The notes under the pieces: model-generated | Told to the model about the DNA's origin: nothing | Database searches by the model: none | Seen by the model: only the letters and a program-made list of their open reading frames with translations | Program-made: the position numbers and the translations under genes | Origin: Rebecca billardiae RCC1528 | Taxonomy: Eukaryota > Protista > Haptophyta | Length of the DNA stretch: 64,000 bases | Assembly: GCA_965240325.2 (NCBI GenBank) | Contig: OZ251243.1 | Coordinates: 1,116,001 to 1,180,000, forward strand | Direction: 5' to 3' | In this document: positions 2,044 to 21,867 of the stretch, piece by piece | Layout of the letters: the number at the start of each line of letters is the position of its first letter | Numbering within the stretch: the stretch's first letter is position 1

Positions 2044-5000
2044 TCAAATGAGCGCCGCGCCGGCCGCTGTGCCGCCCCACGGCCGCCTCGGTCCGACGAT
2101 GCCGCGCAGGCAGCACGCGCTCGCGCCCGCGGCGACGGGCGCGCACGTGGCGAGCGCGAGCGCTGCCCACAGCCACAGCCGGGCGTGCTGCGCCGCGTCC
2201 GCCACCACGCGCGCGGCCGCGTCCACCGCCGCGCGCTCGGCCGCGGCGGCGCTGCCCACGCCGGACGTCCCACTGAGCACCAGATGGTGGCGGTGCTCGG
2301 CGGGGCCAGGCGGCTCGCCCGTCGCGGAGGCGAGCGCGCTGGCCAGCGAGAGCAGGAGCGCGCAGGTGGCGAGGGCGACGAGCGCCGCGGCGGGCGCCAC
2401 GACCGCCGCCGCCGGCGCGGGCAGCAGCGGCGGCGGCGGCTTGGCCCGGAGCAGGCTCGCGCCCGTCTCGGCGGCGGCGAGCGCAAGTGCACACGCCAGC
2501 ACACCGACGCAGAGGGCGAGCGCCGCCGCGTGCACCGCGGGCTCGGCGCAGCTCGTGAGCGCGACCAGCACCTCCGCGCCCGCGAACAGGGCGAACGCGC
2601 GCGCCACGCCGAACCGCAGCAGCGCGCGGCGCGCGCTCGGCGCCACAGGCCGCCACGCGGCGGCGGCGTGCGCGGGCGTGAGGTGCGGCTCCGCGGCGGC
2701 GGCGGCGGCGGCGCCGCTGCCGCTGGAGCCCTGCGCGCCGGACTCGAGGTGCAGAATCCGGCCGAGCCCCGAGCCCTCCGCGCCGCACGTGCCACAGAGC
2801 GGAGGCGCGTGCGCACGGCGCAGCGGCTGCCCGTGCGCCTCCTCCTCGCTCGGCACCGAGGCGTCGGCGTCGGCGTCGGCATCGGCGTCGGCGCCGCCGC
2901 GCGCGCCGCCGGCGTCGGCGCGCGCCTCGTGTGCGCCGCGCGACGGCTCGTGCTCCGGCACCGGGCTGGCGGGCACGAACGGCGCGGGCGCGCGCGGACG
3001 GTGCGCCGCTGCTGCCGCCGCCGTGGGCTCCACAGGGATGCCCGCCGCCGGCGCCGCGCACTCGGGGCACGGCGTGCGCCGCGCGCCGTCCGCGCCGGGC
3101 CGGCGGCCCAGCCAGCGCGTCCAGCGGACCCGGACTCGCCGAGCATGCACGGCGGCAGCGTCATCAGCGCGCCGTGCGGCCGGCGCGGCGCGCGCGTGCG
3201 CGCCGTCCGCGCACGCCACCGCCGGCGCGCTCGGCGAGCGGCGCGCGAGACTGGGCCGCGCGTCGGCAGAGCCCGCCGGCGCGGGCGGCGGGTGGCGCGC
3301 GTGGTGCTGCGCGTCGTGACGCGGGGCCGCCGCCTCCGCCGCCTCCGCCTCGGGCCGCCGCCCGGACCACCCGGACTGCGCGGAAGTCCGGACCGCCGCC
3401 TCCTCCGCCTCGAGCCGTGCCGACCAGAACGCGGCGAAGATGACGTGTGCGATGTCGACGAGCGGCGCGGGGCGCGCGCGCGCGCGGCCCGGCCACGCGC
3501 GCGCCCAGCGCCAGCACCACCGCGCGCCCCTCCGCCCGAGCAGCGCCCGCCGCATCCGCGCCGCGGCGGACGTGCGGTCGTGCTCGCGCGCACACAGCGC
3601 CACCAGCCTGTCAGCCACAGCCACCGCCATCGGCACCGCCGCCATCGGCGCAGCCGCCGCACCCGTCGAGCGGCGCGTCGAGCCACGACGCGCCCCGCGC
3701 GCTAATCGGCAGCGGGATGTATGTCCGCCCCTCCCACTACCCGGGAATCGTCGTGGGCTCGCCCGTCGCGGAGGGCGCGCACGCGCAGTGCGGCCGCGCG
3801 CGCCGGCGCTAGGCGGTGGAGTGCGCCGGCGGCGGGGCGGCGACGCGCGGCGCTCGCGCCCTGCGATGCACCCACGCCGCCGCCCGAGGCGGCCTCAGCG
3901 GCCGCGCGCGCTCGCTCGCGTTGCTGCGCGACGTCGTCCTTCCGCCGCCATCGTGGTCGTCGCCGCCGCTCGCCTCCGCCGAAAGTCCGGGCGCACGACG
4001 CCGAACGACTGCGAGAAAGTTCCCCGATATGGGTGATAAGTGAGCCTTGGCTGGCGTCAGCCAGATCATACGGCCCTCGGTCGGACATGATCATATGGCA
4101 TTCAGGCTTTTCCCTCTGAATCCCAGCCCTACAGAAAGGTGGCTGTAGTACTACTGTCAACTTCTTCTGACCGCCTATGAAATCAGTGGCGGAAAGCCTG
4201 AATCAGTGGGTCCTTTGGGCAGCGATGCCTGTTCAGTTTGTTCTCATGGCGTATCAGGCGAACGTTCGCTTGGCAGCGATGCCGATTGAGTTTATTATTC
4301 TCATTGCGTACAGTATCGGCAGCAGTATTGATGAGCCTGTTATTGAGCCATCATTGGATGCGCTCGATGACGCGACCGGATTATTGGGTCGTCACACGGC
4401 GCACCACGTCCACGGCCGCCTCGGTCCGACGATGCCGCGCAGGCAGCACGCGCTCGCGCCCGCGGCGACGGGCGCGCACGTGGCGAGCGCGAGCGCTGCC
4501 CACAGCCACAGCCGGGCGTGCTGCGCCGCGTCCGCCACCACGCGCGCGGCCGCGTCCACCGCCGCGCGCTCGGCCGCGGCGGCGCTGCCCACGCCGGACG
4601 TCCCACTGAGCACCAGATGGTGGCGGTGCTCGGCGGGGCCAGGCGGCTCGCCCGTCGCGGAGGCGAGCGCGCTGGCCAGCGAGAGCAGGAGCGCGCAGGT
4701 GGCGAGGGCGACGAGCGCCGCGGCGGGCGCCACGACCGCCGCCGCCGGCGCGGGCAGCAGCGGCGGCGGCGGCTTGGCCCGGAGCAGGCTCGCGCCCGTC
4801 TCGGCGGCGGCGAGCGCAAGTGCACACGCCAGCACACCGACGCAGAGGGCGAGCGCCGCCGCGTGCACCGCGGGCTCGGCGCAGCTCGTGAGCGCGACCA
4901 GCACCTCCGCGCCCGCGAACAGGGCGAACGCGCGCGCCACGCCGAACCGCAGCAGCGCGCGGCGCGCGCTCGGCGCCACAGGCCGCCACGCGGCGGCGGC

Positions 5001-7182
5001 GTGCGCGGGCGTGAGGTGCGGCTCCGCGGCGGCGGCGGCGGCGCCGCTGGAGCCCTGCGCGCCGGACTCGAGGTGCAGAGTCCGGCCGAGCCCCGAGCCC
5101 TCCGCGCCGCACGTGCCACAGAGCGGAGGCGCGTGCGCACGGCGCAGCGGCTGCCCGTGCGCCTCCTCCTCGCTCGGCACCGAGGCGTCGGCGTCGGCGT
5201 CGGCATCGGCGTCGGCGCCGCCGCGCGCGCCGCCGGCGTCGGCGCGCGCCTCGTGTGCGCCGCGCGACGGCTCGTGCTCCGGCACCGGGCTGGCGGGCAC
5301 GAACGGCGCGGGCGCGCGCGGACGGTGCGCCGCTGCTGCCGCCGCCGTGGGCTCCACAGGGATGCCCGCCGCCGGCGCCGCGCACTCGGGGCACGGCGTG
5401 CGCCGCGCGCCGTCCGCGCCGGGCCGGCGGCCCAGCCAGCGCGTCCAGCGCGCCTGCTGCCGCGGCCGCGGCTGGCGGGGCGCCGGCGCGGCGCGCGCGT
5501 GCGCGCCGTCCGCGCACGCCACCGCCGGCGCGCTCGGCGAGCGGCGCGCGAGACTGGGCCGCGCGTCGGCAGAGCCCGCCGGCGCGGGCGGCGGGTGGCG
5601 CGCGTGGTGCTGCGCGTCGTGACGCGGGGCCGCCGCCTCCGCCGCCTCCGCCTCGGGCCGCCGCCCGGACCACCCGGACTGCGCGGAAGTCCGGACCGCC
5701 GCCTCCTCCGCCTCGAGCCGTGCCGACCAGAACGCGGCGAAGATGACGTGTGCGATGTCGACGAGCGGCGCGGGGCGCGCGCGCGCGCGGCCCGGCCACG
5801 CGCGCGCCCAGCGCCAGCACCACCGCGCGCCCCTCCGCCCGAGCAGCGCCCGCCGCATCCGCGCCGCGGCGGACGTGCGGTCGTGCTCGCGCGCACACAG
5901 CGCCACCAGCCTGTCAGCCACAGCCACCGCCATCGGCACCGCCGCCATCGGCGCAGCCGCCGCACCCGTCGAGCGGCGCGTCGAGCCACGACGCGCCCCG
6001 CGCGCTAATCGGCAGCGGGATGTATGTCCGCCCCTCCCACTACCCGGGAATCGTCGTGGGCTCGCCCGTCGCGGAGGGCGCGCACGCGCAGTGCGGCCGC
6101 GCGCGCCGGCGCTAGGCGGTGGAGTGCGCCGGCGGCGGGGCGGCGACGCGCGGCGCTCGCGCCCTGCGATGCACCCACGCCGCCGCCCGAGGCGGCCTCA
6201 GCGGCCGCGCGCGCTCGCTCGCGTTGCTGCGCGACGTCGTCCTTCCGCCGCCATCGTGGTCGTCGCCGCCGCTCGCCTCCGCCGAAAGTCCGGGCGCACG
6301 ACGCCGAACGACTGCGAGAAAGTTCCCCGATATGGGTGATAAGTGAGCCTTGGCTGGCGTCAGCCAGAGCGCCACCAGCCTGTCAGCCACAGCCACCGCC
6401 ATCGGCACCGCCGCCATCGGCGCAGCCGCCGCACCCGTCGAGCGGCGCGTCGAGCCACGACGCGCCCCGCGCGCTAATCGGCAGCGGGATGTATGTCCGC
6501 CCCTCCCACTACCCGGGAATCGTCGTGGGCTCGCCCGTCGCGGAGGGCGCGCACGCGCAGTGCGGCCGCGCGCGCCGGCGCTAGGCGGTGGAGTGCGCCG
6601 GCGGCGGGGCGGCGACGCGCGGCGCTCGCGCCCTGCGATGCACCCACGCCGCCGCCCGAGGCGGCCTCAGCGGCCGCGCGCGCTCGCTCGCGTTGCTGCG
6701 CGACGTCGTCCTTCCGCCGCCATCGTGGTCGTCGCCGCCGCTCGCCTCCGCCGAAAGTCCGGGCGCACGACGCCGAACGACTGCGAGAAAGTTCCCCGAT
6801 ATGGGTGATAAGTGAGCCTTGGCTGGCGTCAGCCAGATCATACGGCCCTCGGTCGGACATGATCATATGGCATTCAGGCTTTTCCCTCTGAATCCCAGCC
6901 CTACAGAAAGGTGGCTGTAGTACTACTGTCAACTTCTTCTGACCGCCTATGAAATCAGTGGCGGAAAGCCTGAATCAGTGGGTCCTTTGGGCAGCGATGC
7001 CTGTTCAGTTTGTTCTCATGGCGTATCAGGCGAACGTTCGCTTGGCAGCGATGCCGATTGAGTTTATTATTCTCATTGCGTACAGTATCGGCAGCAGTAT
7101 TGATGAGCCTGTTATTGAGCCATCATTGGATGCGCTCGATGACGCGACCGGATTATTGGGTCGTCACACGGCGCACCACGTC
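2044..7182. repeat. Complex tandem array of rearranged partial copies of the downstream HET-like gene plus two foreign segments
   Basis: Near-identical blocks start at 2077, 4410 and 7182. Segment B (3721-4074) occurs three times (also 6024 and 6493). Segment C (about 4075-4409) occurs twice, 2772 bp apart. There is a 469-bp internal tandem duplication at about 5898-6836. Confidence 0.9.
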
Positions 7183-10100
7183 CACGGCCGCCTCGGTCCG
7201 ACGATGCCGCGCAGGCAGCACGCGCTCGCGCCCGCGGCGACGGGCGCGCACGTGGCGAGCGCGAGCGCTGCCCACAGCCACAGCCGGGCGTGCTGCGCCG
7301 CGTCCGCCACCACGCGCGCGGCCGCGTCCACCGCCGCGCGCTCGGCCGCGGCGGCGCTGCCCACGCCGGACGTCCCACTGAGCACCAGATGGTGGCGGTG
7401 CTCGGCGGGGCCAGGCGGCTCGCCCGTCGCGGAGGCGAGCGCGCTGGCCAGCGAGAGCAGGAGCGCGCAGGTGGCGAGGGCGACGAGCGCCGCGGCGGGC
7501 GCCACGACCGCCGCCGCCGGCGCGGGCAGCAGCGGCGGCGGCGGCTTGGCCCGGAGCAGGCTCGCGCCCGTCTCGGCGGCGGCGAGCGCAAGTGCACACG
7601 CCAGCACACCGACGCAGAGGGCGAGCGCCGCCGCGTGCACCGCGGGCTCGGCGCAGCTCGTGAGCGCGACCAGCACCTCCGCGCCCGCGAACAGGGCGAA
7701 CGCGCGCGCCACGCCGAACCGCAGCAGCGCGCGGCGCGCGCTCGGCGCCACAGGCCGCCACGCGGCGGCGGCGTGCGCGGGCGTGAGGTGCGGCTCCGCG
7801 GCGGCGGCGGCGGCGCCGCTGGAGCCCTGCGCGCCGGACTCGAGGTGCAGAGTCCGGCCGAGCCCCGAGCCCTCCGCGCCGCACGTGCCACAGAGCGGAG
7901 GCGCGTGCGCACGGCGCAGCGGCTGCCCGTGCGCCTCCTCCTCGCTCGGCACCGAGGCGTCGGCGTCGGCGTCGGCATCGGCGTCGGCGCCGCCGCGCGC
8001 GCCGCCGGCGTCGGCGCGCGCCTCGTGTGCGCCGTGCGACGGCTCGTGCTCCGGCACCGGGCTGGCGGGCACGAACGGCGCGGGCGCGCGCGGACGGTGC
8101 GCCGCTGCTGCCGCCGCCGTGGGCTCCACAGGGATGCCCGCCGCCGGCGCCGCGCACTCGGGGCACGGCGTGCGCCGCGCGCCATCCGCGCCCGGCCGCC
8201 GGCCCAGCCAGCGCGCCTGCTGCCGCGGCCTCCGCCCCAGGACTGCCCGCCGCGCCGCAGCCTGCTCCGCGCCCGGACGGCGCCGGAGGTTGGGCAGCGA
8301 GATGCTGCGCGTGGCGCGCACCGGCTCCGGGCGGGCCCCCGCGCCAGCGCCACCGCACCGCGGCTGCTCCCTGCCGGCGCAGCCCGCGGCGCGGGAGTCC
8401 GGGAGCAGCCCGGACCCGGACTCGCCGAGCATGCACGGCGGCAGCGTCATCAGCGCGCCGTGCGGCGCCTGCAGGTGCGGCGCTGGGAGCAGCACGCACC
8501 GCCAGCCAAGCGCGCGCAGCTGCCGCAGCGAGAGGGCAGGCCGCTCCGCGTCGGCGCCGCAGCACGCGCACGCGCCCCGCTCGGCCCCGCCCCGCGCCCC
8601 CGCGCCTCGGCGCACCGAGCCGCGCGGCGAGCTGACAGGTGTCAGACCGCATGCGCCAAACTCGCCGCCGCCCCCGCCGCCGAGGCCACAGCCACCGCCA
8701 TCGGCACCGCCGCCATCGGCGCAGCCGCCGCACCCGTCGAGCGGCGCGTCGAGCCACGACGCGCCCCGCGCGCTAATCGGCAGCGGGATGTGGCGGCTCT
8801 CGAGCCACTCGCGCGGCGAGGCGAGCCCAGCGAGATGCGGCTGGCGGGGCGCCGGCGCGGCGCGCGCGTGCGCGCCGTCCGCGCACGCCACCGCCGGCGC
8901 GCTCGGCGAGCGGCGCGCGAGACTGGGCCGCGCGTCGGCAGAGCCCGCCGGCGCGGGCGGCGGGTGGCGCGCGTGGTGCTGCGCGTCGTGACGCGGGGCC
9001 GCCGCCTCCGCCGCCTCCGCCTCGGGCCGCCGCCCGGACCACCCGGACTGCGCGGAAGTCCGGACCGCCGCCTCCTCCGCCTCGAGCCGTGCCGACCAGA
9101 ACGCGGCGAAGATGACGTGTGCGATGTCGACGCGCGGCGCGGGGCGCGCGCGCGCGCGGCCCGGCCACGCGCGCGCCCAGCGCCAGCACCACCGCGCGCC
9201 CCTCCGCCCGAGCAGCGCCCGCCGCATCCGCGCCGCGGCGGACGTGCGGTCGTGCTCGCGCGCACACAGCGCCACCAGCCTGTCAGCCAGCTCCTTCACT
9301 GTGACCACGTCCAGTCGGTCGTGACACGGGAGCGAGGGCAGGCCTGCGTGCAGTGCGGCGATGGCGTCGAGGCTCTCCGCCTTTGACGGCTGCGAGGCCA
9401 TCGCGCGCAGCACGCGCGCGCCGTGCCGCGCCCACAGCACCTGCTGCCGGAGCAGCGAGCGCGCGCTTACCCACATGCAAGTCACCGCGACTATTGAGAG
9501 CAGGGCCAATAGGAGCGGCTGGCGGCACGCGGCCGCCGGCCGGGCGGCGGCGCGCCAGGTGTGCGCGCAGAGCAGGCCGATGAGGGCGTAGTACGCGCTG
9601 TTCACCGCGCACAGCTCGCCCACCGGCAGCTCCTCCGCCGCCGCCGCCGCCTCCGCCTCCGCCTCCGCCCCCGCCTCCGCCTCCGCCCGCGCCGCCGCCG
9701 CCAGCGCCGCGCTCGCCGCATCCCTCCTGGTACGCGGCAGCGGCGCGCACAGCCATGGGCGCAGCGGCGGCGGCAGCGCCGAGGCGCCGAGGCGGCCGAG
9801 CCTGCCCGGGGCGACGCGGTCCCACGGGCACGCCGGCGCGAGCGAGCCGAGCGCCGCCAGCCGGCGCTGCGCACCGGACAGTCCGGGGCCCGCCGTCTCG
9901 ACCGGCAGCGAGCGCGAGACGCACGCGAGCGTTTCCAACGTCGGCCACAGCCGGAACGGGTACGCGCCGAAGGGGACGTCGGAGCGCGCGCGGGGGAGCC
10001 AGACGACGCCGGCCATCTGCGTGATCACCTCGCTCAGCGTGTCCACGAAGAGCCCGTGGTCGTACGCGCCCACCTTCACGCGGAAGCAGAAGACGTCGAC

Positions 10101-13035: not shown

Positions 13036-13268
13036 GGCGGCGGGCTGGCGGGCGGCGCGCCCACGGGCGGGGCGAGCGCAGTGCCCCTGGCGCTGCTCGC
13101 GCGCCAGACCTGAGTCGTGCCAGCAGCCGGCCGCACGCGCGCGGCTTACTCATCATTGACAGTGGGCGTAATTCCCCGCCGCCCTTGAATTACGAGTCGT
13201 CTGTAGTCGTAGTATTCCATAAGCGCATGATGACGATGCATTATTGCTTAATATATATATATATATAT

Positions 13269-13772
13269 TGATTGGCACTTCGTGCGCTGGCGGAGGTTCG
13301 CTCTTTGGCGATGGTGGCGCAGGGGTCTCCCTGCTTCTGATCAGTTCGGTTTTTGTTGTGTGGCTGGTGTAGCTCCAGATCGCTGAGAAAAACTTTTGTA
13401 GGGTTCTCACGAAGGACTCATCCCAGAACTTTCGTGATTAGAAAGTTTGGAGATGCTTCTCGGCTTCTGATTGCGAAGGCACGTTCTCGGAATGATCTGA
13501 TAGTGCATTGCCCTGCGAAGGCTTGAGAACATCTCAGGAGCTTTGATTCCTGGATTGTTCCGCGACGCTTGTTGGCCATTATGAAATGCACGATGAATGA
13601 TGATGAATGAATTGGTGCACTGGACGTGAATAAAACCGACAGTTGAGGTCGATGATAAGGTTTTGAATTTGGAATGAAGCCTCAGCATGGTGGCGCTTAG
13701 AATTGCTCAGCGCCTTGAGATTGAAACCTCGAGCTGGGGAATGGCGCCAATGGCTGCCTTGGGCTTTTGACA
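13269..13772 (-). repeat. 3' LTR of the copia element
   Basis: TGATTGGCAC...GGGCTTTTGACA on the + strand; direct repeat of 20439-20942. Confidence 0.95.
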
Positions 13773-13781
13773 CGCCCCCTC
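13773..13781 (-). promoter_or_regulatory. Polypurine tract of the copia element
   Basis: GAGGGGGCG on the - strand immediately before the 3' LTR, overlapping the pol stop codon. Confidence 0.75.
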
Positions 13782-16700
13782 AATTCGAAACTGGTGCAAC
13801 CATGATGTCTCGGAATTTTGCAAACTTGTCCTTGGGTAGCGCCTTGGTAAGACAATCGGCGATGTTTTCCGATGTGTGTACCTTGATGATGTTGACTGCA
13901 CCGAGGTCGACACAATCTCGAATAAAATGGTGTCGTACGTCGATGTGCTTGGTGCGCTTATGATGGATGCTGTTCTTCGAGAGATCAATCGCCCCCTTGT
14001 TGTCCTCATGGATCACAATGGGCGTCTTGGGGATATTGAGAATATCGCTGATGATGTCGCGTAGGTAAACTGCCTCTTTGGCTCCTTCAGCGAGAGCGAC
14101 ATATTCGGCCTCACATGATGAGAGGGTTGTGATTGACTGCTTGAAGGTGCGCCACGATACTGGGCCGCCTGCGTGGAAGTAGATATAGCTTCCTGTCGAG
14201 CGGCGATCCTTTGTATCGTTGGCCCAATCCGAGTCCACAAACATCTCCGTCCGTGGCTGAGTAGGTGTTGATTTGAAAGTGATGCCGGAATTCTTTGTCC
14301 CGGCCAAGTACCTGAGCACTCGCTTGGCACCTTTAAGGTCGTTCGAACTTGGGCTTGCCATGTACCTTGCCAACATGTTGACTGCATAGCTGATGTCGGG
14401 TCGGCAGGTGTTCATGATGAATAGTAGCGCTCCGACGATTGCTCGGTAGGTCTTTGATTCCTCCGACGAGCACGATGATGAATCGTCTGTCTCGATTGAT
14501 GTCGGTTGCTCTGCTGCCGATCTGCATGGGTTGTCGACGGGCGTAATGTCGCTCATGTCGTGCCTCTTGAGGAGATCGGTGATGTACTGTGACATGGAGA
14601 TAGTCGTCGACTTGGGCCCCTGGGTGATATTCATGCCCAGGAACGTCGTTGCTGGTCCCAAATCCCGGAGGGTAAATTCTTTTCGAATTTCCTCAATAAT
14701 CGAGCTGGGCCTTGCGCTGTCGGGGGAGCTGCTCAGAATAAGCAGATCGTCCACGTACACTGCGATGACGTCGATGATGTCTCCGGAGATGCGGACGAAG
14801 ATGCACTCCGACTGTGCGAGTTTCTTGAATCCTTTCTCTCGCAGTTTCTGGCTGAGGCGGAGGTGCCATCGTCTGCCGCTCTGCTTAAATCCTGGAAGGG
14901 CCATATCCCAGTCGGCCGCGACCACATGCCCCTCAGGTGGCTTGAGAGTACACGGGTACAGCGGGGGTAGCGTAGTGTAGATCTTCAGGCCGTCCTCCAA
15001 AGGGGCTTGGAGGTACGCCGTACTCACGTCCGCGGAGTGGATGATCCAAGGTCTTTCTGGTGTTCGTAGCTCCGTCGTCAGTGCCAATAGGAGGCGTACA
15101 TTCTCGTACCGGATAGTAGGCGAGAATACCTCGTCGTAATTGACTCCTTGAATCTGGCGGAAGCCTTGACCAACCAATCTTGCCTTGTACCGTTCGATGG
15201 TACCATCTGGATTGGCTTTGACCTTGAAGACCAGCTTCGATGGGATAATTGCTTTCCCTTTGGGAACAACGACGGGCGTGAATGTGCCCAGTCTGTCGTG
15301 GGCCTCGTATTCTTCCATGATAGCCCTTGTCCAATCGGATGCTTGCTTGCTCTCCATCGCTTCCTTGAACGATGTAGGTACCGGGATATCTGATGCGAGC
15401 TGCGCGAGCTGCGCGCGCGCGCGCGCGCGCCGCGTCGACGGGAAGTATGACTTGCCAGTCATGTTGCGGGTCCGCTGTGGGCGACGATCGGCGGAGGGAG
15501 GAGGCTGCTTCGGCTGCGGCGGCGCGTTGCTGGGCGATGGTCCGCCTCCAGCTCCGGGGCCGTCTTCATCACCGTCGTCGTCGCCGTCATCTCCCTTCTC
15601 GTCGTCGTCGGGGCCGTCCCCGTCATCCTCGTCGTCATCGTCGTCTGATTTCTCGTCCGGCGGTGGTGGATCGTCTCCTCCGCGCTCGGAGCCGCTGTCG
15701 GCGTCGCTGCTGCTGCTGGCAAACTCTTCGTCGCCCTCCTCGATGGTGTTGCTGTCATGGGTCTTACCAGCATCTGCACCTTGAGGAGGTCGCCGAGCGC
15801 TCCACGCCAGCAGGGGGTCCCGAATTTCGCGGATCTCCTTGAAATGCGTAGAGATTCGATCCAAAATGACTTGCTCGTTGAACTTGACATGCCGAGTGAT
15901 GACGATTTTCCCGTCGTCGGCACTCAAAACGATGTATCCGTGCGATCGCTTGATGGCGCCTCGCTCGAAGATACCGTCAAATCCGTATCCCAATAAGATG
16001 CCCTCCCGCGCGCGCGGGAGTAGCTTGTTCTGCTTGTTGATCGACTGTACGAGGTAGATGCAGGGCGAGCCCCAGACTCTCAGCTTTTGCAGGAATGGCC
16101 CGGGCGAGGTGCCAAACATCAACTCGTGCGGTGAAACCAGCTTGCCATCGCTGGTAGGATGCTTGCTCATCAGGTTGCGTTGCGCGGCAGCGCACTTGGC
16201 TGCCCAATGCCACCATTTGTGGTGTACGCCTGAGAGGTACAGCATTGTCCTGGCGTCATTCATGATGACTCCGAGGCCACGTTCGGCGACGCCGTTCAGC
16301 TGCTGCGTGTGGGGGGGCGACATGTAGTTGCATAGCATGTCGTACCTGCGAAGGACTCGGTTCCAATTCTTTGAGTGTAACTCTCGGCCTCCGTCGAGGT
16401 GAATGGTGCATCCGGCGATGCCCTTGTTCTGCATGGTGGCGGATAGAGAGTTGGCTCCCATCTCGCTGGCCATGAGGTCGAGCTTCTCCGGCGCTTCAGC
16501 CTTGTTTTGCATGTCGTAGAAGCGCATGTATCCGGAAAAATCATCGATGAATAGAGTTCCCCACCTTGGAGTCTTGGCGGGCAGCCCGTTGATGGGCCCG
16601 ATGACATCGTTGTGGAGCATCTCGAGCGGTCGAGTTGTCCTCTCACGTGTGCCCGGGAACGGCTTAGCTTTGAACTTGGCAACGTCGGAGGGCTGGTACG

Positions 16701-17373
16701 TGCAGGGCGATGCCTCCGACATCTTGTCGTTCGCGCGGTAGGTTGCGCGTACACGCTTGATATCGGCGTATCCTAGTCTGGATTGCCAGAGCGTGATCTT
16801 TCGCCCGTTCTTGATCGGGTCGACGTCTGGTGGCATGTCGTCCGCGGTGGCGGGCATGGCTGTCTCGGCCTTGGGTACGACTGCCTTGAATCCGACAGTG
16901 TTGTCGGGGCGCAAATGAACCCTCTTGGGGCCGATGCGGATGTATGGTCGTTCGTCGAACACCACAGCCATTCCGGCCGCGGCGAACGCGTTGACTGAAA
17001 AGAGAGTAGTATCGAGATCTTCGACTCCGACTACGTTTTCCAGGCACACCGGCACGGTTGTGTCTGAGTCGGCGTCGAGTAAGTATACGTACATGTCGCC
17101 TGCCTTGGATGCGTGTAGCTCAATGTCGCGCTTGGCGACCTTGACAGACATGCTGATCGGGTGAGCATTGTGTAGCAGGCCGAGGTTGATATCGACAAAT
17201 GATTGGGACGCGCCCGAGTCCAGATACGCGTATTGCGTCGGCTCGAGATCTGCGTCATCGGGTTCCGGGTCGATGTCCTCGTCGTGCATCATCTGGGCTC
17301 GCGGCCTCCCCGCCCGCTTGGGGGGCGGAGGTACTTTGATGAACTTGCCGTCACGCCCGCCGGGCTTGGCGGG
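13780..17373 (-). CDS. pol: Copia pol region (protease, integrase, reverse transcriptase, RNase H), cut off from gag
   Basis: Protease YLDSGAS; integrase LHNDVIGP / HLDGGRE / NGVAER; RT RYKARLV / DVSTAYL / YVDDLL; RNase H DSDWA / EAEY / EDNKGA / KHIDVRHH / ADCLTK. Confidence 0.95.
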   Translation of the reverse strand, partial: PAKPGGRDGKFIKVPPPPKRAGRPRAQMMHDEDIDPEPDDADLEPTQYAYLDSGASQSFVDINLGLLHNAHPISMSVKVAKRDIELHASKAGDMYVYLLDADSDTTVPVCLENVVGVEDLDTTLFSVNAFAAAGMAVVFDERPYIRIGPKRVHLRPDNTVGFKAVVPKAETAMPATADDMPPDVDPIKNGRKITLWQSRLGYADIKRVRATYRANDKMSEASPCTYQPSDVAKFKAKPFPGTRERTTRPLEMLHNDVIGPINGLPAKTPRWGTLFIDDFSGYMRFYDMQNKAEAPEKLDLMASEMGANSLSATMQNKGIAGCTIHLDGGRELHSKNWNRVLRRYDMLCNYMSPPHTQQLNGVAERGLGVIMNDARTMLYLSGVHHKWWHWAAKCAAAQRNLMSKHPTSDGKLVSPHELMFGTSPGPFLQKLRVWGSPCIYLVQSINKQNKLLPRAREGILLGYGFDGIFERGAIKRSHGYIVLSADDGKIVITRHVKFNEQVILDRISTHFKEIREIRDPLLAWSARRPPQGADAGKTHDSNTIEEGDEEFASSSSDADSGSERGGDDPPPPDEKSDDDDDEDDGDGPDDDEKGDDGDDDGDEDGPGAGGGPSPSNAPPQPKQPPPSADRRPQRTRNMTGKSYFPSTRRARARAQLAQLASDIPVPTSFKEAMESKQASDWTRAIMEEYEAHDRLGTFTPVVVPKGKAIIPSKLVFKVKANPDGTIERYKARLVGQGFRQIQGVNYDEVFSPTIRYENVRLLLALTTELRTPERPWIIHSADVSTAYLQAPLEDGLKIYTTLPPLYPCTLKPPEGHVVAADWDMALPGFKQSGRRWHLRLSQKLREKGFKKLAQSECIFVRISGDIIDVIAVYVDDLLILSSSPDSARPSSIIEEIRKEFTLRDLGPATTFLGMNITQGPKSTTISMSQYITDLLKRHDMSDITPVDNPCRSAAEQPTSIETDDSSSCSSEESKTYRAIVGALLFIMNTCRPDISYAVNMLARYMASPSSNDLKGAKRVLRYLAGTKNSGITFKSTPTQPRTEMFVDSDWANDTKDRRSTGSYIYFHAGGPVSWRTFKQSITTLSSCEAEYVALAEGAKEAVYLRDIISDILNIPKTPIVIHEDNKGAIDLSKNSIHHKRTKHIDVRHHFIRDCVDLGAVNIIKVHTSENIADCLTKALPKDKFAKFRDIMVAPVSN

Positions 17374-18652
17374 ACTTTTCAAGCGTATCAAGGACATGAT
17401 GCTGCCAAGTCTCTTTTCGTACCTCGAGTCGAAAAGGCACATCGTGAACCCGAATGAGAATTTCCTGAATTTACATACTCTGCTCGAAATCTTCGAGCAC
17501 GAGCTGAACGTATCGACCATGTCGGAGCTCCGGGCTGAGTTCAAGAAGCTCTACCCGGACCGACCGACCCCGGTGAGCGGCCCTGAGATGATCAAGCAAA
17601 CGGTGGAGATGGTACGCGCATCACGCTATCGAGAGCTAGACGACGCCACACTCCTCGTGTTCAAGCTGTACAATGGGATGCACGAGCACCCAGAGGTCTA
17701 CTCGACCGTCATCTCTATTTACGGTTCAATGTCGCCCCAGCAATGCGTGGCGCAGACCGAACAGCTCACCGCCCAGATCGAGGACGCATACAGGCGTTGG
17801 ACTCAGTCGCCCAAGGGACGACAGGCAACGCAACGTGACCCCAAGCGGGGCGGTCCCGCGCACGCTCTCAATACTGAGGAGGCGGACCGCCGACAACCAG
17901 CCGTCACGTGCTCGCACTGCGGGCTACGCAATCACACCGCAGAGCGGTGCTGGAAGCTACATCCAGACTTGCGGCCACCCAGGCCGCCCGGTGCACCAAA
18001 ACAGGGCGGCTTGAAGTTGCCCTGTTTTGGTGCACCGGGCGGCCTGGGTGGCCGCAAGTCTGGATGTAGCTTCCAGCACCGCTCTGCGGTGTGATTGCGT
18101 AGCCCGCAGTGCGAGCACGTGACGGCTGGTTGTCGGCGGTCCGCCTCCTCAGTATTGAGAGCGTGCGCGGGACCGCCCCGCTTGGGGTCACGTTGCGTTG
18201 CCTGTCGTCCCTTGGGCGACTGAGTCCAACGCCTGTATGCGTCCTCGATCTGGGCGGTGAGCTGTTCGGTCTGCGCCACGCATTGCTGGGGCGACATTGA
18301 ACCGTAAATAGAGATGACGGTCGAGTAGACCTCTGGGTGCTCGTGCATCCCATTGTACAGCTTGAACACGAGGAGTGTGGCGTCGTCTAGCTCTCGATAG
18401 CGTGATGCGCGTACCATCTCCACCGTTTGCTTGATCATCTCAGGGCCGCTCACCGGGGTCGGTCGGTCCGGGTAGAGCTTCTTGAACTCAGCCCGGAGCT
18501 CCGACATGGTCGATACGTTCAGCTCGTGCTCGAAGATTTCGAGCAGAGTATGTAAATTCAGGAAATTCTCATTCGGGTTCACGATGTGCCTTTTCGACTC
18601 GAGGTACGAAAAGAGACTTGGCAGCATCATGTCCTTGATACGCTTGAAAAGT
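17374..18652. repeat. Perfect inverted repeat: arms 17374-18007 and 18019-18652 (634 bp), 11-nt spacer
   Basis: Mirror-image ORFs appear in the track (for example 17726-17917 on - and 18109-18300 on +). The centre reads CAGGGC-GGCTTGAAGTT-GCCCTG. Confidence 0.95.
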
Positions 18653-20438
18653 ACTTCCACCGATCGCTCGTAGACGATCGTCATCTGCATGATGGTGGTG
18701 TCCGCGTCCATGTTTGCGAATGCGGTTGCGTAAGGTTCCCGAATAGCATTTTCGGCTGTCCACACGGCTGCCTCGGCCAGCGCGTATCCGGAGAGCCTGG
18801 CCTCGACGAGGGTGACCATGGACGACGTAGTGTCGGTCGCTCTTCCCTTGTAGGAAGCCTTGACCTCGGTGACTGCGTCCTTGATCGCTCCGTGGATAGC
18901 CATTTTCGATTTGATTGTGAAGAAATTCAGCTTGTAGCTTCCGACGCCGAGCTGGCTTGTCTGCACAGCCATCATTGCATGTGCGTCGGGCAAGTAGGTG
19001 CAAGCTTCGCTTCCATTTCTGCGCGTTCGCGGTGACGCGTGGGGCGAGCTTGTCTCAATGTGGTCCTCTGCTGTGGTATAGCTGTCAATGTCCGACGTAG
19101 AGGACTCGTCCCCATGGCTGCTCTGCTGTGCGCTGTTGTCGGCGCCAGTCGCGGCAGGCGGGTAGTTTGTGCCATGTCCAGGTGGACCGTCGTCAGCTGG
19201 CGAGTGTCCCTCGCCTGCTTCAGAAGTCAGCCCATAGAACTCGTCGTGCAGTAAGCATGCGACACCTGGCTGTAGGAGTGCGTCGTTACAATGGAACATG
19301 AGATCAAACTTGCTTTGGTGAAGCTCGTCCCTTTCCCGCACATAGTCTCCAACTGTGTAGTTGTGACCTTGATGCCGCTCTGCGGCTGCTGCGATGAAGC
19401 CTCCCGATGGCCGCCGAGGGCAAATATCATCGAGGCTGGCGCCTGCGTCATTCACGACGCTCAGGCTGCGGCGATCAGCCGCTGCGACGGGTCCGTCCTG
19501 TTGGTGGACGTGAATGCCATCATCATCGATGTCAATCCCATCGTTCATCGCTGCAAACTGGATGATCTGCTCACATTCGAGCTGATGCTGAACCTGGATG
19601 GCGTCTGCGCATCGGTAGCTGCAGACTCTGCCCATCCCACAGATGTTGCACTCAAGAAGGCAATGCCTCGATGTGCACGACTGATTGTCGCACGGCTGGC
19701 ACGACGCTGGATCATCGTCATCAATCTCACTCCACTGGTTAGGCGTTGTCGCCGCGCCCTTGTAGGCGGGCGTAGAGTCCCAGCCGCTCGCATAGACGGA
19801 AGGGAGAATCTGGAACGTGAAGGAGGGGACATATGGGATCGAGTCGGTCGCCGACTGTCGTCCCTGTGTCTGACGCGCGCTGGGAATCAGCGTGGGGATA
19901 CTTTGCGCGTGCGCGGTGCGCGTGCGCGCGCCGCGTTTGGCCTCGCGTTGCGAGGTTTGGTGGTTGTGACCCCGCGGCTGGAGCGGGTCCCGCAGCGCAG
20001 ACGCGGCGCTGGGTGGCTCTGTGCGCTCCGCTCTCCACGCCCCGTCGTCGGGTGCGTGGTTGGAGTCCTTGTTGACCTTGAAGCGCCACTTGCGGCGCTT
20101 GACCTGTAGTACGCGTTGTCGCTGGGCTTTGCCGTCGCGGCCGCTGAGGTTGTGGTCTTGCTCGCTCCGCGGGGGATGTCCGAAGCGGTAGTCGAGGTTC
20201 TTGAACGAGCGCAGCTGCTCGTTCGAAGTACGCGTCCTCTCGCCTCGCGGCTGCTGCGAAGGTCGAGAGTGGTTGCGTTCCGGTCGGTCGCGTGACGCGC
20301 GCTTTGGCTGCTGCGCCGCCGGTCTGGTGGTGTCGTCGGTCAAATCCTCGCGGATGTCGACCTTCGAGTTCGGGTGAAACCGCGCGCGTCCGCGCGGTGT
20401 GTTCCCACGTTGTCCGCCGCGAAGCTCCCATGAGCTCA

Positions 20439-20439
<1 letters not shown>
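18007..20439 (-). CDS. gag: Copia gag with a long N-terminal extension (MYND-like finger) and a CCHC zinc knuckle
   Basis: The ATG overlaps the last base of the 5' LTR. Zinc knuckle CSHCGLRNHTAERC. Cys/His cluster at 19573-19701. Same frame as pol. Confidence 0.85.

Positions 20440-21867
<1,428 letters not shown>

What the first reader, a model, noticed from the sequence alone, without database searches (positions are those of the whole stretch)
17374..18652. Young copia element carrying a perfect 634-bp fold-back palindrome: candidate natural hairpin-RNA silencer of its own family
Seen: arms 17374-18007 and 18019-18652 are reverse complements around an 11-nt loop. The turn occurs at a native 4-bp stem, GGGC-aacttcaagcc-GCCC, and the sequence then resumes exactly where it left. 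Deleting 17374-18006 (633 nt, 211 codons) restores one gag-pol frame (...KQGNFKPPAKPGGRDGKF...) of about 2008 aa. The LTRs look identical, so the event is recent. Inference: a polymerase or reverse-transcriptase fold-back template switch. Transcription from the intact 5' LTR would give a 634-bp dsRNA stem of gag sequence, which could silence intact family members in trans, as maize Mu killer does for Mutator.
Basis: partly seen in the sequence, partly recalled or inferred. Interest (0 to 1): 0.8.

Follow-up and report, generated by a model that had tools for sequence, protein, structure and literature searches.

The report
Copia copy with perfect gag palindrome
One copy of a young, active copia-type jumping gene in a GC-rich alga carries a perfect 634-base mirror-image duplicate of its own gag region. 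It is most likely a one-off copying accident, and the genome seems to lack the Argonaute/Dicer machinery it would need to act as a silencer.

Summary
Arms 17374-18007 and 18019-18652 are perfect reverse complements (634/634) around an 11-nt spacer. They lie inside a minus-strand Ty1/copia element (13269-20942) with identical 504-bp LTRs. All 22 other genomic loci of the family lack exactly these 633 nt and keep the native GGGC-N11-GCCC mini-hairpin where the turn occurs. Both arms share a haplotype found in no other copy, so the inverted arm was copied from this copy itself. The copy is also a mosaic of two family lineages, with one crossover inside the duplicated segment. I read it as a sense-strand fold-back (snap-back) template switch, most likely by the element's own reverse transcriptase during the cycle that made this copy. 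It does not have the shape of a long-read fold-back artefact, but read support could not be checked.

The silencer idea is not supported. Whole-genome HMM searches found no Piwi, PAZ, ArgoN or Dicer-dimer domain, only a bacterial-type RNase III and one RdRP gene. The family shows no sign of shutdown: 18 of 20 copies have intact ORFs and most have identical LTR pairs. The copy encodes Gag plus a 23-residue tail, and its pol part is cut off.

An earlier unchecked note of this scan (s1-346493) reports another such copia copy in the same genome.

The parts
13269..20942 (-). Whole Ty1/copia element, 7674 bp (natural relatives of the same 5' structure are about 7.04-7.06 kb), inserted in a (TA)n microsatellite
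   Evidence: LTR pair and TG...CA ends. RVT_2 and integrase SH3-like domains. Collinear with 20 other copies. (TA)n flanks at 13251-13268 and 20943-21072.
20439..20942 (-). 5' LTR (504 bp)
   Evidence: 504/504 identical to the 3' LTR.
13269..13772 (-). 3' LTR (504 bp), preceded on the sense strand by the polypurine tract GAGGGGGCG
18019..18652 (-). Native gag segment G (right arm), in its normal place and orientation. It ends in ...CAGGGC and contains the CCHC zinc knuckle at 18076-18117.
   Evidence: Collinear with all other copies. Translation. Knuckle coordinates.
18008..18018 (-). 11-nt spacer (sense AACTTCAAGCC), which is native sequence between the native 4-bp inverted repeat GGGC/GCCC
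   Evidence: Present in every copy, with two variable positions in the spacer.
17374..18007 (+). Inverted duplicate G' (left arm). It reads gag sense on the + strand and has 6 in-frame stops in the element's sense frame.
   Evidence: 634/634 reverse complement of G. Absent from all 22 other loci. Stops listed.
17371..17373 (-). CCC at the return junction. It is either a re-copied or non-templated triplet, or part of the native GCCC, because the placement of the insertion is ambiguous.
   Evidence: Junction reads ...GAAAAGT CCC GCCAAG..., against the native ...GCCC GCCAAG....
17935..20439 (-). Truncated ORF, 835 aa from the first in-frame ATG: a long pre-Gag extension plus Gag through the zinc knuckle (812 native residues), then a 23-residue tail read from the inverted arm
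   Evidence: No Pfam family found.
13780..17370 (-). Pol part (protease region, integrase, RT, RNase H), 1196 codons. It is open, but cut off from gag by the stops in the inverted arm.
   Evidence: ORF 13780-17544. SH3_retrovirus at 15868-16098 and RVT_2 at 14524-15285.
18124..18352 (-). Interval holding a crossover between two family lineages (L034/L036-like upstream, L032-like downstream), inside the native arm and mirrored in the inverted arm
   Evidence: Diagnostic-site runs. Arm haplotype table.

Best explanation
This is a real, very recent, one-off inverted duplication inside one copy of a young, active copia family.

A polymerase making the sense strand had just copied gag up to ...GGGC-N11-GCCC. 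Its 3' end snapped back on the nascent strand at that 4-bp mini-hairpin and copied about 630 nt of the strand it had just made. It then returned to the original template at the point of departure.

The most likely polymerase is the element's own reverse transcriptase, during plus-strand DNA synthesis in the retrotransposition cycle that created this copy. The far end of the duplicate may mark the 5' end of an internally primed plus-strand fragment.

The result is a dead-end copy. It can encode Gag plus a 23-residue tail, but not Pol. If transcribed, its RNA would fold into a 634-bp hairpin. It probably has no silencing role, because the genome appears to lack Argonaute and Dicer.

Shown: the structure, its uniqueness, its origin from this same copy, the mosaic ancestry and the missing RNAi domains. 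Inferred: which polymerase acted, the timing, and the internal-primer idea.
For: - **Structure.** Perfect arms and native junction anatomy.
- **Uniqueness.** All 22 other loci lack the segment.
- **Same-copy origin.** Both arms carry a haplotype that differs from every other copy at 3 to 17 sites, so the duplicate was templated by this copy itself.
- **Strand.** The duplicated piece lies upstream of the turn on the sense strand. That is what a nascent sense-strand fold-back predicts; a minus-strand fold-back would duplicate the downstream side. This follows from the sequence.
- **Template-switch history.** The copy is a mosaic of two lineages, with crossovers at sense positions 2591-2819 (inside the arm) and 5459-5901. 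This mosaic is not seen in any other copy, which fits a reverse-transcription cycle rich in template switches.
- **Youth.** LTRs are 504/504 and arms 634/634 identical, leaving little time for a post-integration accident. Every copy, by contrast, went through one error-prone reverse-transcription cycle.
- **Published precedent.** Self-priming by reverse transcriptase at 3' hairpins is documented in vitro (PMC6088434).
- **Possible primer site.** A purine-rich GGTGGAAG sits directly before the far end of the duplicate. Only 3.7% of internal positions have such a tract there.
- **Not an artefact shape.** Described long-read fold-back artefacts are whole-read palindromes that do not return to the first strand (PMC12870357).
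- **Not pervasive.** No other such palindrome in 240 kb scanned.
- **Against a silencer.** No Piwi, PAZ, ArgoN or Dicer_dimer; one class-1 RNase III only.
Against: - No reads were available, so support by several independent molecules is unverified.
- Nothing in the sequence separates a reverse-transcriptase event from a host-replication or repair fold-back after integration.
- The mosaic could have arisen in an unsampled parent copy, or by gene conversion.
- The return junction has 0-3 nt of homology. A freed snap-back hairpin re-engaging exactly the vacated template site is a demanding step.
- The purine-tract coincidence is weak (about 0.04-0.1).
- The absence of Argonaute rests on six-frame HMM searches, and a very divergent or heavily intron-split gene could be missed. 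The presence of an RdRP gene hints that some RNA-silencing pathway may exist.
Confidence: 0.6

Rival explanations
1. Post-integration host replication or repair event. After this copy had integrated, a nascent sense strand at a stalled fork or a resected break folded back at GGGC-N11-GCCC, or switched to the complementary parental strand. It copied about 630 nt and switched back. This would be a fold-back inversion of the FoSTeS/MMBIR or ODIRA type.
For: The same junction anatomy fits: a 4-bp inverted microhomology at the turn and 0-3 nt at the return. Microhomology-mediated inverted duplications are known products of error-prone replication and repair (PMC11226609). The same 64-kb window holds other 100%-identical scrambled duplications at 2077-9150, which hints at template switching in this region.
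Against: The LTR pair and the arms have zero differences, so the time window was short. The family covers only about 0.2% of the genome, so a random replication accident landing in it is unlikely a priori, whereas reverse-transcriptase errors land in such copies by definition. The copy already carries a unique recombination signature of the reverse-transcriptase type. Earlier unchecked notes report other copia copies with fold-back ends that were integrated with target-site duplications (s1-367706).
Confidence: 0.25
2. Assembly or library artefact. The 633 nt come from a chimeric molecule or read, for example polymerase template switching during amplification or library repair, that was kept in the consensus. 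The real locus would then be a normal copy.
For: Fold-back and palindromic artefacts are common in long-read data and after whole-genome amplification (PMC12870357, PMC6218980). The locus is a 7-kb repeat with more than 20 near-identical copies, where read placement is harder. Perfect long palindromes are expected to be unstable in vivo (established knowledge). Read support could not be checked.
Against: Described fold-back artefacts are symmetric whole-read palindromes without a return to the first strand. Here the sequence turns at a native asymmetric 11-nt spacer and comes back after 634 nt to the departure point, with unique flanks on both sides. Both arms carry this copy's private haplotype, so no reads from other copies were mixed in. 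No other such palindrome was found in 240 kb. The rest of the copy is clean, with both ORF pieces open and in phase.
Confidence: 0.1
3. One reading: a natural hairpin-RNA silencer. Transcription from the 5' LTR gives a 634-bp dsRNA that is processed into small RNAs, which silence intact family members in trans, as Mu killer does for Mutator.
For: The hairpin would be perfect and very stable. It lies downstream of an intact 5' LTR. Its arms are 97-99.5% identical to all other copies. The concept is established for TE inverted duplications (PMC3440606, PMC11624286). One RdRP gene and one dsRNA-cutting RNase III exist.
Against: No Piwi, PAZ, ArgoN or Dicer_dimer domain was found anywhere in the 72-Mb genome, by a method that does find RNase III and RdRP here and finds prokaryotic Argonautes in the control genomes. 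The RNase III has one catalytic domain and one dsRBD, so it is not a Dicer. The family shows no sign of shutdown: 18 of 20 copies have intact ORFs of 1944-2233 aa, and 11 of 17 full LTR pairs are 100% identical.
Confidence: 0.05

Closest known systems
Mu killer of maize (natural inverted duplication of MuDR that silences Mutator)
   Same: A naturally arisen inverted duplication of part of an active transposon. If transcribed, it would give a long perfect hairpin homologous to all family members (PMC3440606).
   Different: Mu killer is a DNA-transposon derivative transcribed from a flanking gene, in a host with full Dicer/Argonaute/RdDM machinery, and its silencing is shown genetically. Here the element is a copia retrotransposon and the duplication lies inside one copy. 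No Argonaute or Dicer was detectable, and no silencing is shown.
Reverse-transcriptase self-priming (snap-back) at 3' hairpins, e.g. HIV-1 minus-strand strong-stop DNA at cTAR; hairpin-primed second-strand cDNA synthesis
   Same: The 3' end of a nascent DNA folds on a short stem and the reverse transcriptase copies its own product, giving an inverted duplicate joined by a short loop (PMC6088434).
   Different: The described cases are in-vitro dead-end products at the strong-stop DNA, and they are suppressed by nucleocapsid protein. Here the turn is internal and on the plus (sense) strand. Synthesis returned to the template, and the product was completed and integrated.
Fold-back inversions from replication template switching (FoSTeS/MMBIR, ODIRA)
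   Same: A short interrupted inverted repeat mediates a switch to the complementary strand, giving an inverted duplication with microhomology at the junction (established knowledge; MMBIR context in PMC11226609).
   Different: Those events usually give large inverted duplications or triplications, or dicentric-type products. Here the product is a 633-nt insertion with exact resumption, inside a copy with independent signs of reverse-transcriptase template switching.
Antisense nested insertion of the Arabidopsis copia element EVD into itself
   Same: A copia family acquires a sense-antisense configuration that has been proposed as a hairpin trigger of silencing (PMC11624286).
   Different: The EVD case is a second integration event, with its own LTRs, 2-2.5 kb apart. 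Here there is no second element and no extra LTR or target duplication. The arms are contiguous, with an 11-nt spacer.
Fold-back artefact reads of long-read sequencing
   Same: Adjacent forward and reverse-complement copies of the same sequence, perfect or nearly so.
   Different: The artefacts are whole-read palindromes with the breakpoint near the read centre and no return to the first strand (PMC12870357). Here a short inverted piece is flanked on both sides by collinear unique sequence.

Membership tests
Ty1/copia LTR retrotransposon | Direct long terminal repeats with TG...CA ends | tested here: met
   504-bp LTRs, 100% identical, TG...CA.
Ty1/copia LTR retrotransposon | RVT_2-type reverse transcriptase, with integrase upstream of RT (copia domain order) | tested here: met
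   SH3_retrovirus (integrase C-terminal domain) at residues 483-559 precedes RVT_2 at 754-1007 of the pol ORF. The same order holds in natural copy L039.
Ty1/copia LTR retrotransposon | Gag with a CCHC zinc knuckle; polypurine tract before the 3' LTR; 5-bp target-site duplication | tested here: inconclusive
   CX2CX4HX4C at 18076-18117 and GAGGGGGCG before the 3' LTR are present. The duplication (TATAT) is uninformative because the target is (TA)n. No Pfam gag family hit. PBS-tRNA match not tested.
Hairpin-RNA silencer locus (Mu killer type) | Long inverted duplication of transposon sequence downstream of a promoter | tested here: met
   634-bp perfect arms 2.3 kb downstream of the start of the intact 5' LTR. 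Promoter activity not tested.
Hairpin-RNA silencer locus (Mu killer type) | Host has Dicer and Argonaute to process and use the dsRNA | tested here: not met
   Piwi, PAZ, ArgoN and Dicer_dimer: no candidates in the 72-Mb genome. The single RNase III gene has 1 catalytic domain and 1 dsRBD. Positive controls in the same genome: RNase III and RdRP were found. Caveat: these are six-frame HMM searches.
Hairpin-RNA silencer locus (Mu killer type) | Arm-derived small RNAs and heritable trans-silencing of the family | not testable with these tools
   No expression, small-RNA or methylation data. Circumstantially the family looks active, with intact ORFs in 18 of 20 copies and mostly identical LTR pairs.
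Reverse-transcriptase snap-back (self-priming) product | Turn at a short inverted repeat of the nascent strand; the duplicate is the stretch made just before the turn | tested here: met
   The native GGGC-N11-GCCC is present in all copies. The duplicated stretch is immediately upstream on the sense strand.
Reverse-transcriptase snap-back (self-priming) product | Made before integration, by the element's reverse transcriptase | not testable with these tools
   Indirect only: a unique two-lineage mosaic with a crossover inside the arm, zero LTR and arm divergence, and a purine tract at the far end.
Long-read fold-back artefact | [quoted passage not shown] | tested here: not met
   The sequence returns to the first strand after 634 nt and continues collinearly for kilobases on both sides. 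Definition from PMC12870357. Read-level support not testable.

The most novel reading that the evidence does not exclude
The palindromic copy is a trans-acting regulator of its own, still active family in an alga without canonical RNAi. It could act through its 634-bp hairpin RNA, fed into a non-canonical pathway (the genome keeps an RdRP and a dsRNA-cutting RNase III but no detectable Argonaute or Dicer). Or it could act through its Gag-plus-tail protein interfering with particle assembly, as truncated Gag does in budding yeast, which also lacks RNAi.
Probability: 0.05. Interest if true: 0.75.

Novelty: new member of a known kind. Interest (0 to 1): 0.3.

Why it matters
If read support confirms it, this is a clean natural record of a snap-back template switch that was completed and integrated. 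Both junctions are intact and the parental recombination signature is still legible. It shows how a retrotransposon can turn one of its own copies into a hairpin locus in a single step.

It is also a caution. A perfect TE hairpin is not evidence of silencing unless the host has the machinery, and here the machinery seems to be missing. Together with other fold-back copia copies noted in this genome, it could be used to measure how often this alga's copia reverse transcriptases self-prime.

Tried and rejected
- **Chance.** Excluded: 634/634 arms, and no other such palindrome in 240 kb.
- **Nested antisense insertion of a second copy.** Rejected: no extra LTR or target duplication, the arms meet at a native site, and both arms share this copy's private haplotype.
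- **Mis-join of reads from other copies.** Rejected: no other copy has the arm haplotype.
- **Minus-strand fold-back.** Rejected: it would duplicate the downstream side, not the upstream gag segment (from the sequence).
- **Locating the other noted case.** I could not find the other palindromic copia copy (s1-346493), because the notes give no coordinates. A search with a full natural copy showed no second inverted segment in this family.
- **Literature.** Searches for an in-vivo, integrated snap-back copy of an LTR retrotransposon found nothing specific.
- **Large protein searches.** Not used, because the claim does not rest on them.

Full report
**1. The observation**

The window contains one outstanding inverted repeat. 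The repeat finder reports arms of about 646 nt at 99%, and a direct comparison gives 17374-18007 and 18019-18652 as exact reverse complements, 634/634. The spacer is 11 nt and the match ends at the very next base outward. Folded as RNA, the stretch is one uninterrupted 634-bp stem (-1465 kcal/mol). In about 240 kb scanned (the window plus 22 fetched loci) it is the only perfect inverted repeat with arms >=30 nt and spacer <=40 nt outside microsatellites. Chance is excluded.

**2. The element**

The palindrome lies in a Ty1/copia element on the minus strand, window 13269-20942.
- The LTRs (13269-13772 and 20439-20942) are 504/504 identical with TG...CA ends.
- A polypurine tract precedes the 3' LTR.
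- The pol ORF carries an integrase SH3-like domain upstream of RVT_2.
- The element sits in a (TA)n microsatellite, so the 5-bp target duplication is uninformative.
- The window is C26:1,116,001-1,180,000 of a 72-Mb, 41-contig, very GC-rich genome. Earlier notes of the scan call it an alga.

**3. The family**

The gag region of the family occurs at 22 other loci, and I fetched 20 of them (L031-L050).
- In every one, the sequence on the two sides of the extra segment is contiguous, with a 3-nt overlap (CCC) in the alignments.
- The two loci I could not fetch are contiguous by their search coordinates.
- A search with a complete natural copy found an inverted piece only at the C26 locus.
- The family is young and looks active. 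18 of 20 copies have a single open frame of 1944-2233 aa from the first ATG (2008 aa in L039). 11 of the 17 copies with a full-length LTR pair in the fetched stretch have 100% identical pairs.
- There are subfamilies with different LTRs and 5' regions.

**4. Junction anatomy (sense strand)**

All copies read ...CAGGGC, an 11-nt spacer, GCCC, then GCC(A/G)AGCCC.... In the window copy, GCCC runs on into the reverse complement of the preceding 630 nt. This ends at ...GAAAAGT and is followed by CCC GCCAAGCCC....

So the turn uses a native 4-bp inverted repeat with an 11-nt loop. The net insertion is 633 nt. The return is to the point of departure, with a register ambiguity of 3-4 nt.

The two ORF pieces are in the same phase. 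The native residues add up to 812 + 1196 = 2008, the length of the natural L039 ORF. I checked this by arithmetic and against natural copies and built no joined sequence.

The inverted arm has six stops in the sense frame. The copy can therefore encode the pre-Gag extension and Gag through the CCHC knuckle (18076-18117), plus a 23-residue tail. Pol is cut off.

**5. Where the duplicate came from**

The arm haplotype differs from every other copy.
- It differs at positions 62, 160 and 301 from L031-L033.
- It differs at 529, 544, 550 and 571 from L034, L036 and L039.
- It differs at 10 to 17 sites from the third subfamily.

Both arms carry this private haplotype. The inverted arm was therefore templated by this copy itself, not by another locus, and not by reads of another locus.

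**6. Mosaic ancestry**

I took sites where L032 differs from L034 and L036 and asked which one the window copy matches along the element.

| Sense positions | Matches | Diagnostic sites |
|---|---|---|
| 350-1250 | L034-like | 52 |
| 1866-1993 | L032-like | 2 |
| 2352-2591 | L034-like | 3 |
| 2819-5459 | L032-like | 26 |
| 5901-7572 | L034-like | 12 |

One firm crossover lies between 2591 and 2819, inside the duplicated segment and 105-333 nt before the turn. No other sampled copy has this mosaic. Recombination between two co-packaged RNAs is the standard way retroelements become mosaics (established knowledge). It shows that the lineage of this copy went through a reverse-transcription cycle rich in template switches, possibly the same cycle that made the fold-back.

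**7. Mechanism (inference)**

The duplicated stretch is the one just upstream of the turn on the sense strand. A nascent-strand fold-back must therefore have happened while the sense strand was being made. A minus-strand fold-back at the same mini-hairpin would have duplicated the downstream side.

Two processes make the sense strand: plus-strand DNA synthesis by the element's reverse transcriptase, and host replication or repair after integration. I favour the first, for these reasons:
- Reverse transcriptases self-prime at 3' hairpins (PMC6088434).
- The copy has a private recombination signature.
- Zero LTR and arm divergence leaves little time for a host accident in a family that covers about 0.2% of the genome.
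- Earlier unchecked notes describe other copia copies of this genome with fold-back ends that were still integrated (s1-367706, s1-346493, s1-332072).

A purine-rich GGTGGAAG lies directly before the far end of the duplicate, and only 3.7% of internal positions have such a tract. This suggests the fold-back synthesis ran off the 5' end of an internally primed plus-strand fragment. The CCC could then be a short non-templated or re-copied bridge back to the template. This last part is speculative.

**8. Artefact?**

The described long-read fold-back artefacts are symmetric whole-read palindromes that do not return to the first strand (PMC12870357). Amplification palindromes are similar (PMC6218980).

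The present structure turns at an asymmetric native spacer, returns after 634 nt, and is collinear with the family for kilobases on both sides. It carries a private haplotype in both arms. That makes an artefact unlikely, at about 0.1.

**9. Silencer?**

The idea needs dsRNA processing and an Argonaute effector. Whole-genome six-frame HMM searches gave:
- no candidates for Piwi, PAZ, ArgoN or Dicer_dimer;
- one RNase III gene, with one catalytic domain and one dsRBD (380 aa), which is a bacterial or organellar type and not a Dicer;
- one eukaryotic RdRP gene (750 aa, 125.9 bits).

The last two show that the method sees such genes in this genome, where exons are long. The Piwi model also rang in the prokaryotic control genomes. 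So a defining requirement of the Mu-killer analogy was tested and not met, with the caveat that a very divergent or intron-shredded gene could escape.

The family also shows no sign of having been shut down. TE-derived hairpins as silencing triggers are in any case a known concept (PMC3440606, PMC11624286).

**10. Verdict**

This is a real-looking, very recent, single-copy snap-back duplication in an active copia family. It is a neat specimen of a known kind of event and probably inert. Interest is modest unless small-RNA or Gag-interference effects are shown.

Noticed in passing
G000:C1:3394323-3395726 (L051:1273-3522:-): One eukaryote-type RNA-dependent RNA polymerase gene (750-aa ORF, PF05183) is present in a genome where no Piwi, PAZ, ArgoN or Dicer_dimer domain was found. 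An RdRP without Argonaute or Dicer is unusual.
   Followed up: partly
window 15042-15484 and 18124-18352: The palindromic copy is a mosaic of two family lineages (L034/L036-like and L032-like). The firm crossovers fall in these two intervals, and no other sampled copy shares the mosaic.
   Followed up: yes
window 20943-21072, 21075-21723, 21724-21865: Next to the element there are two long (TA)n arrays on either side of a 650-bp GC-rich fragment with an open frame on the minus strand and no Pfam hit. The copia copy itself is inserted in the same microsatellite.
   Followed up: no
window 2077-9150: Several 300-nt-plus blocks recur two or three times at 98-100% identity, with irregular spacing (2303, 2333, 2772, 469, 3369 nt). 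This is a scrambled recent duplication in an 80% GC region, and another possible template-switch product in the same window.
   Followed up: no
L036:4470-4510; L034:7245-7400; L050: Other copies carry typical one-off defects. L036 has an internal deletion of about 163 nt with 2-nt microhomology. The 3' LTR of L034 departs from the family after about 100 nt. The ORF of L050 is split in two.
   Followed up: partly
window 18653-20439 (minus strand): The first in-frame ATG straddles the boundary between the 5' LTR and the primer-binding region. About 600 residues ahead of the duplicated gag segment match no Pfam family. Subfamilies differ in the length of this pre-Gag part (ORFs of 2008 versus 2217-2233 aa).
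   Followed up: no
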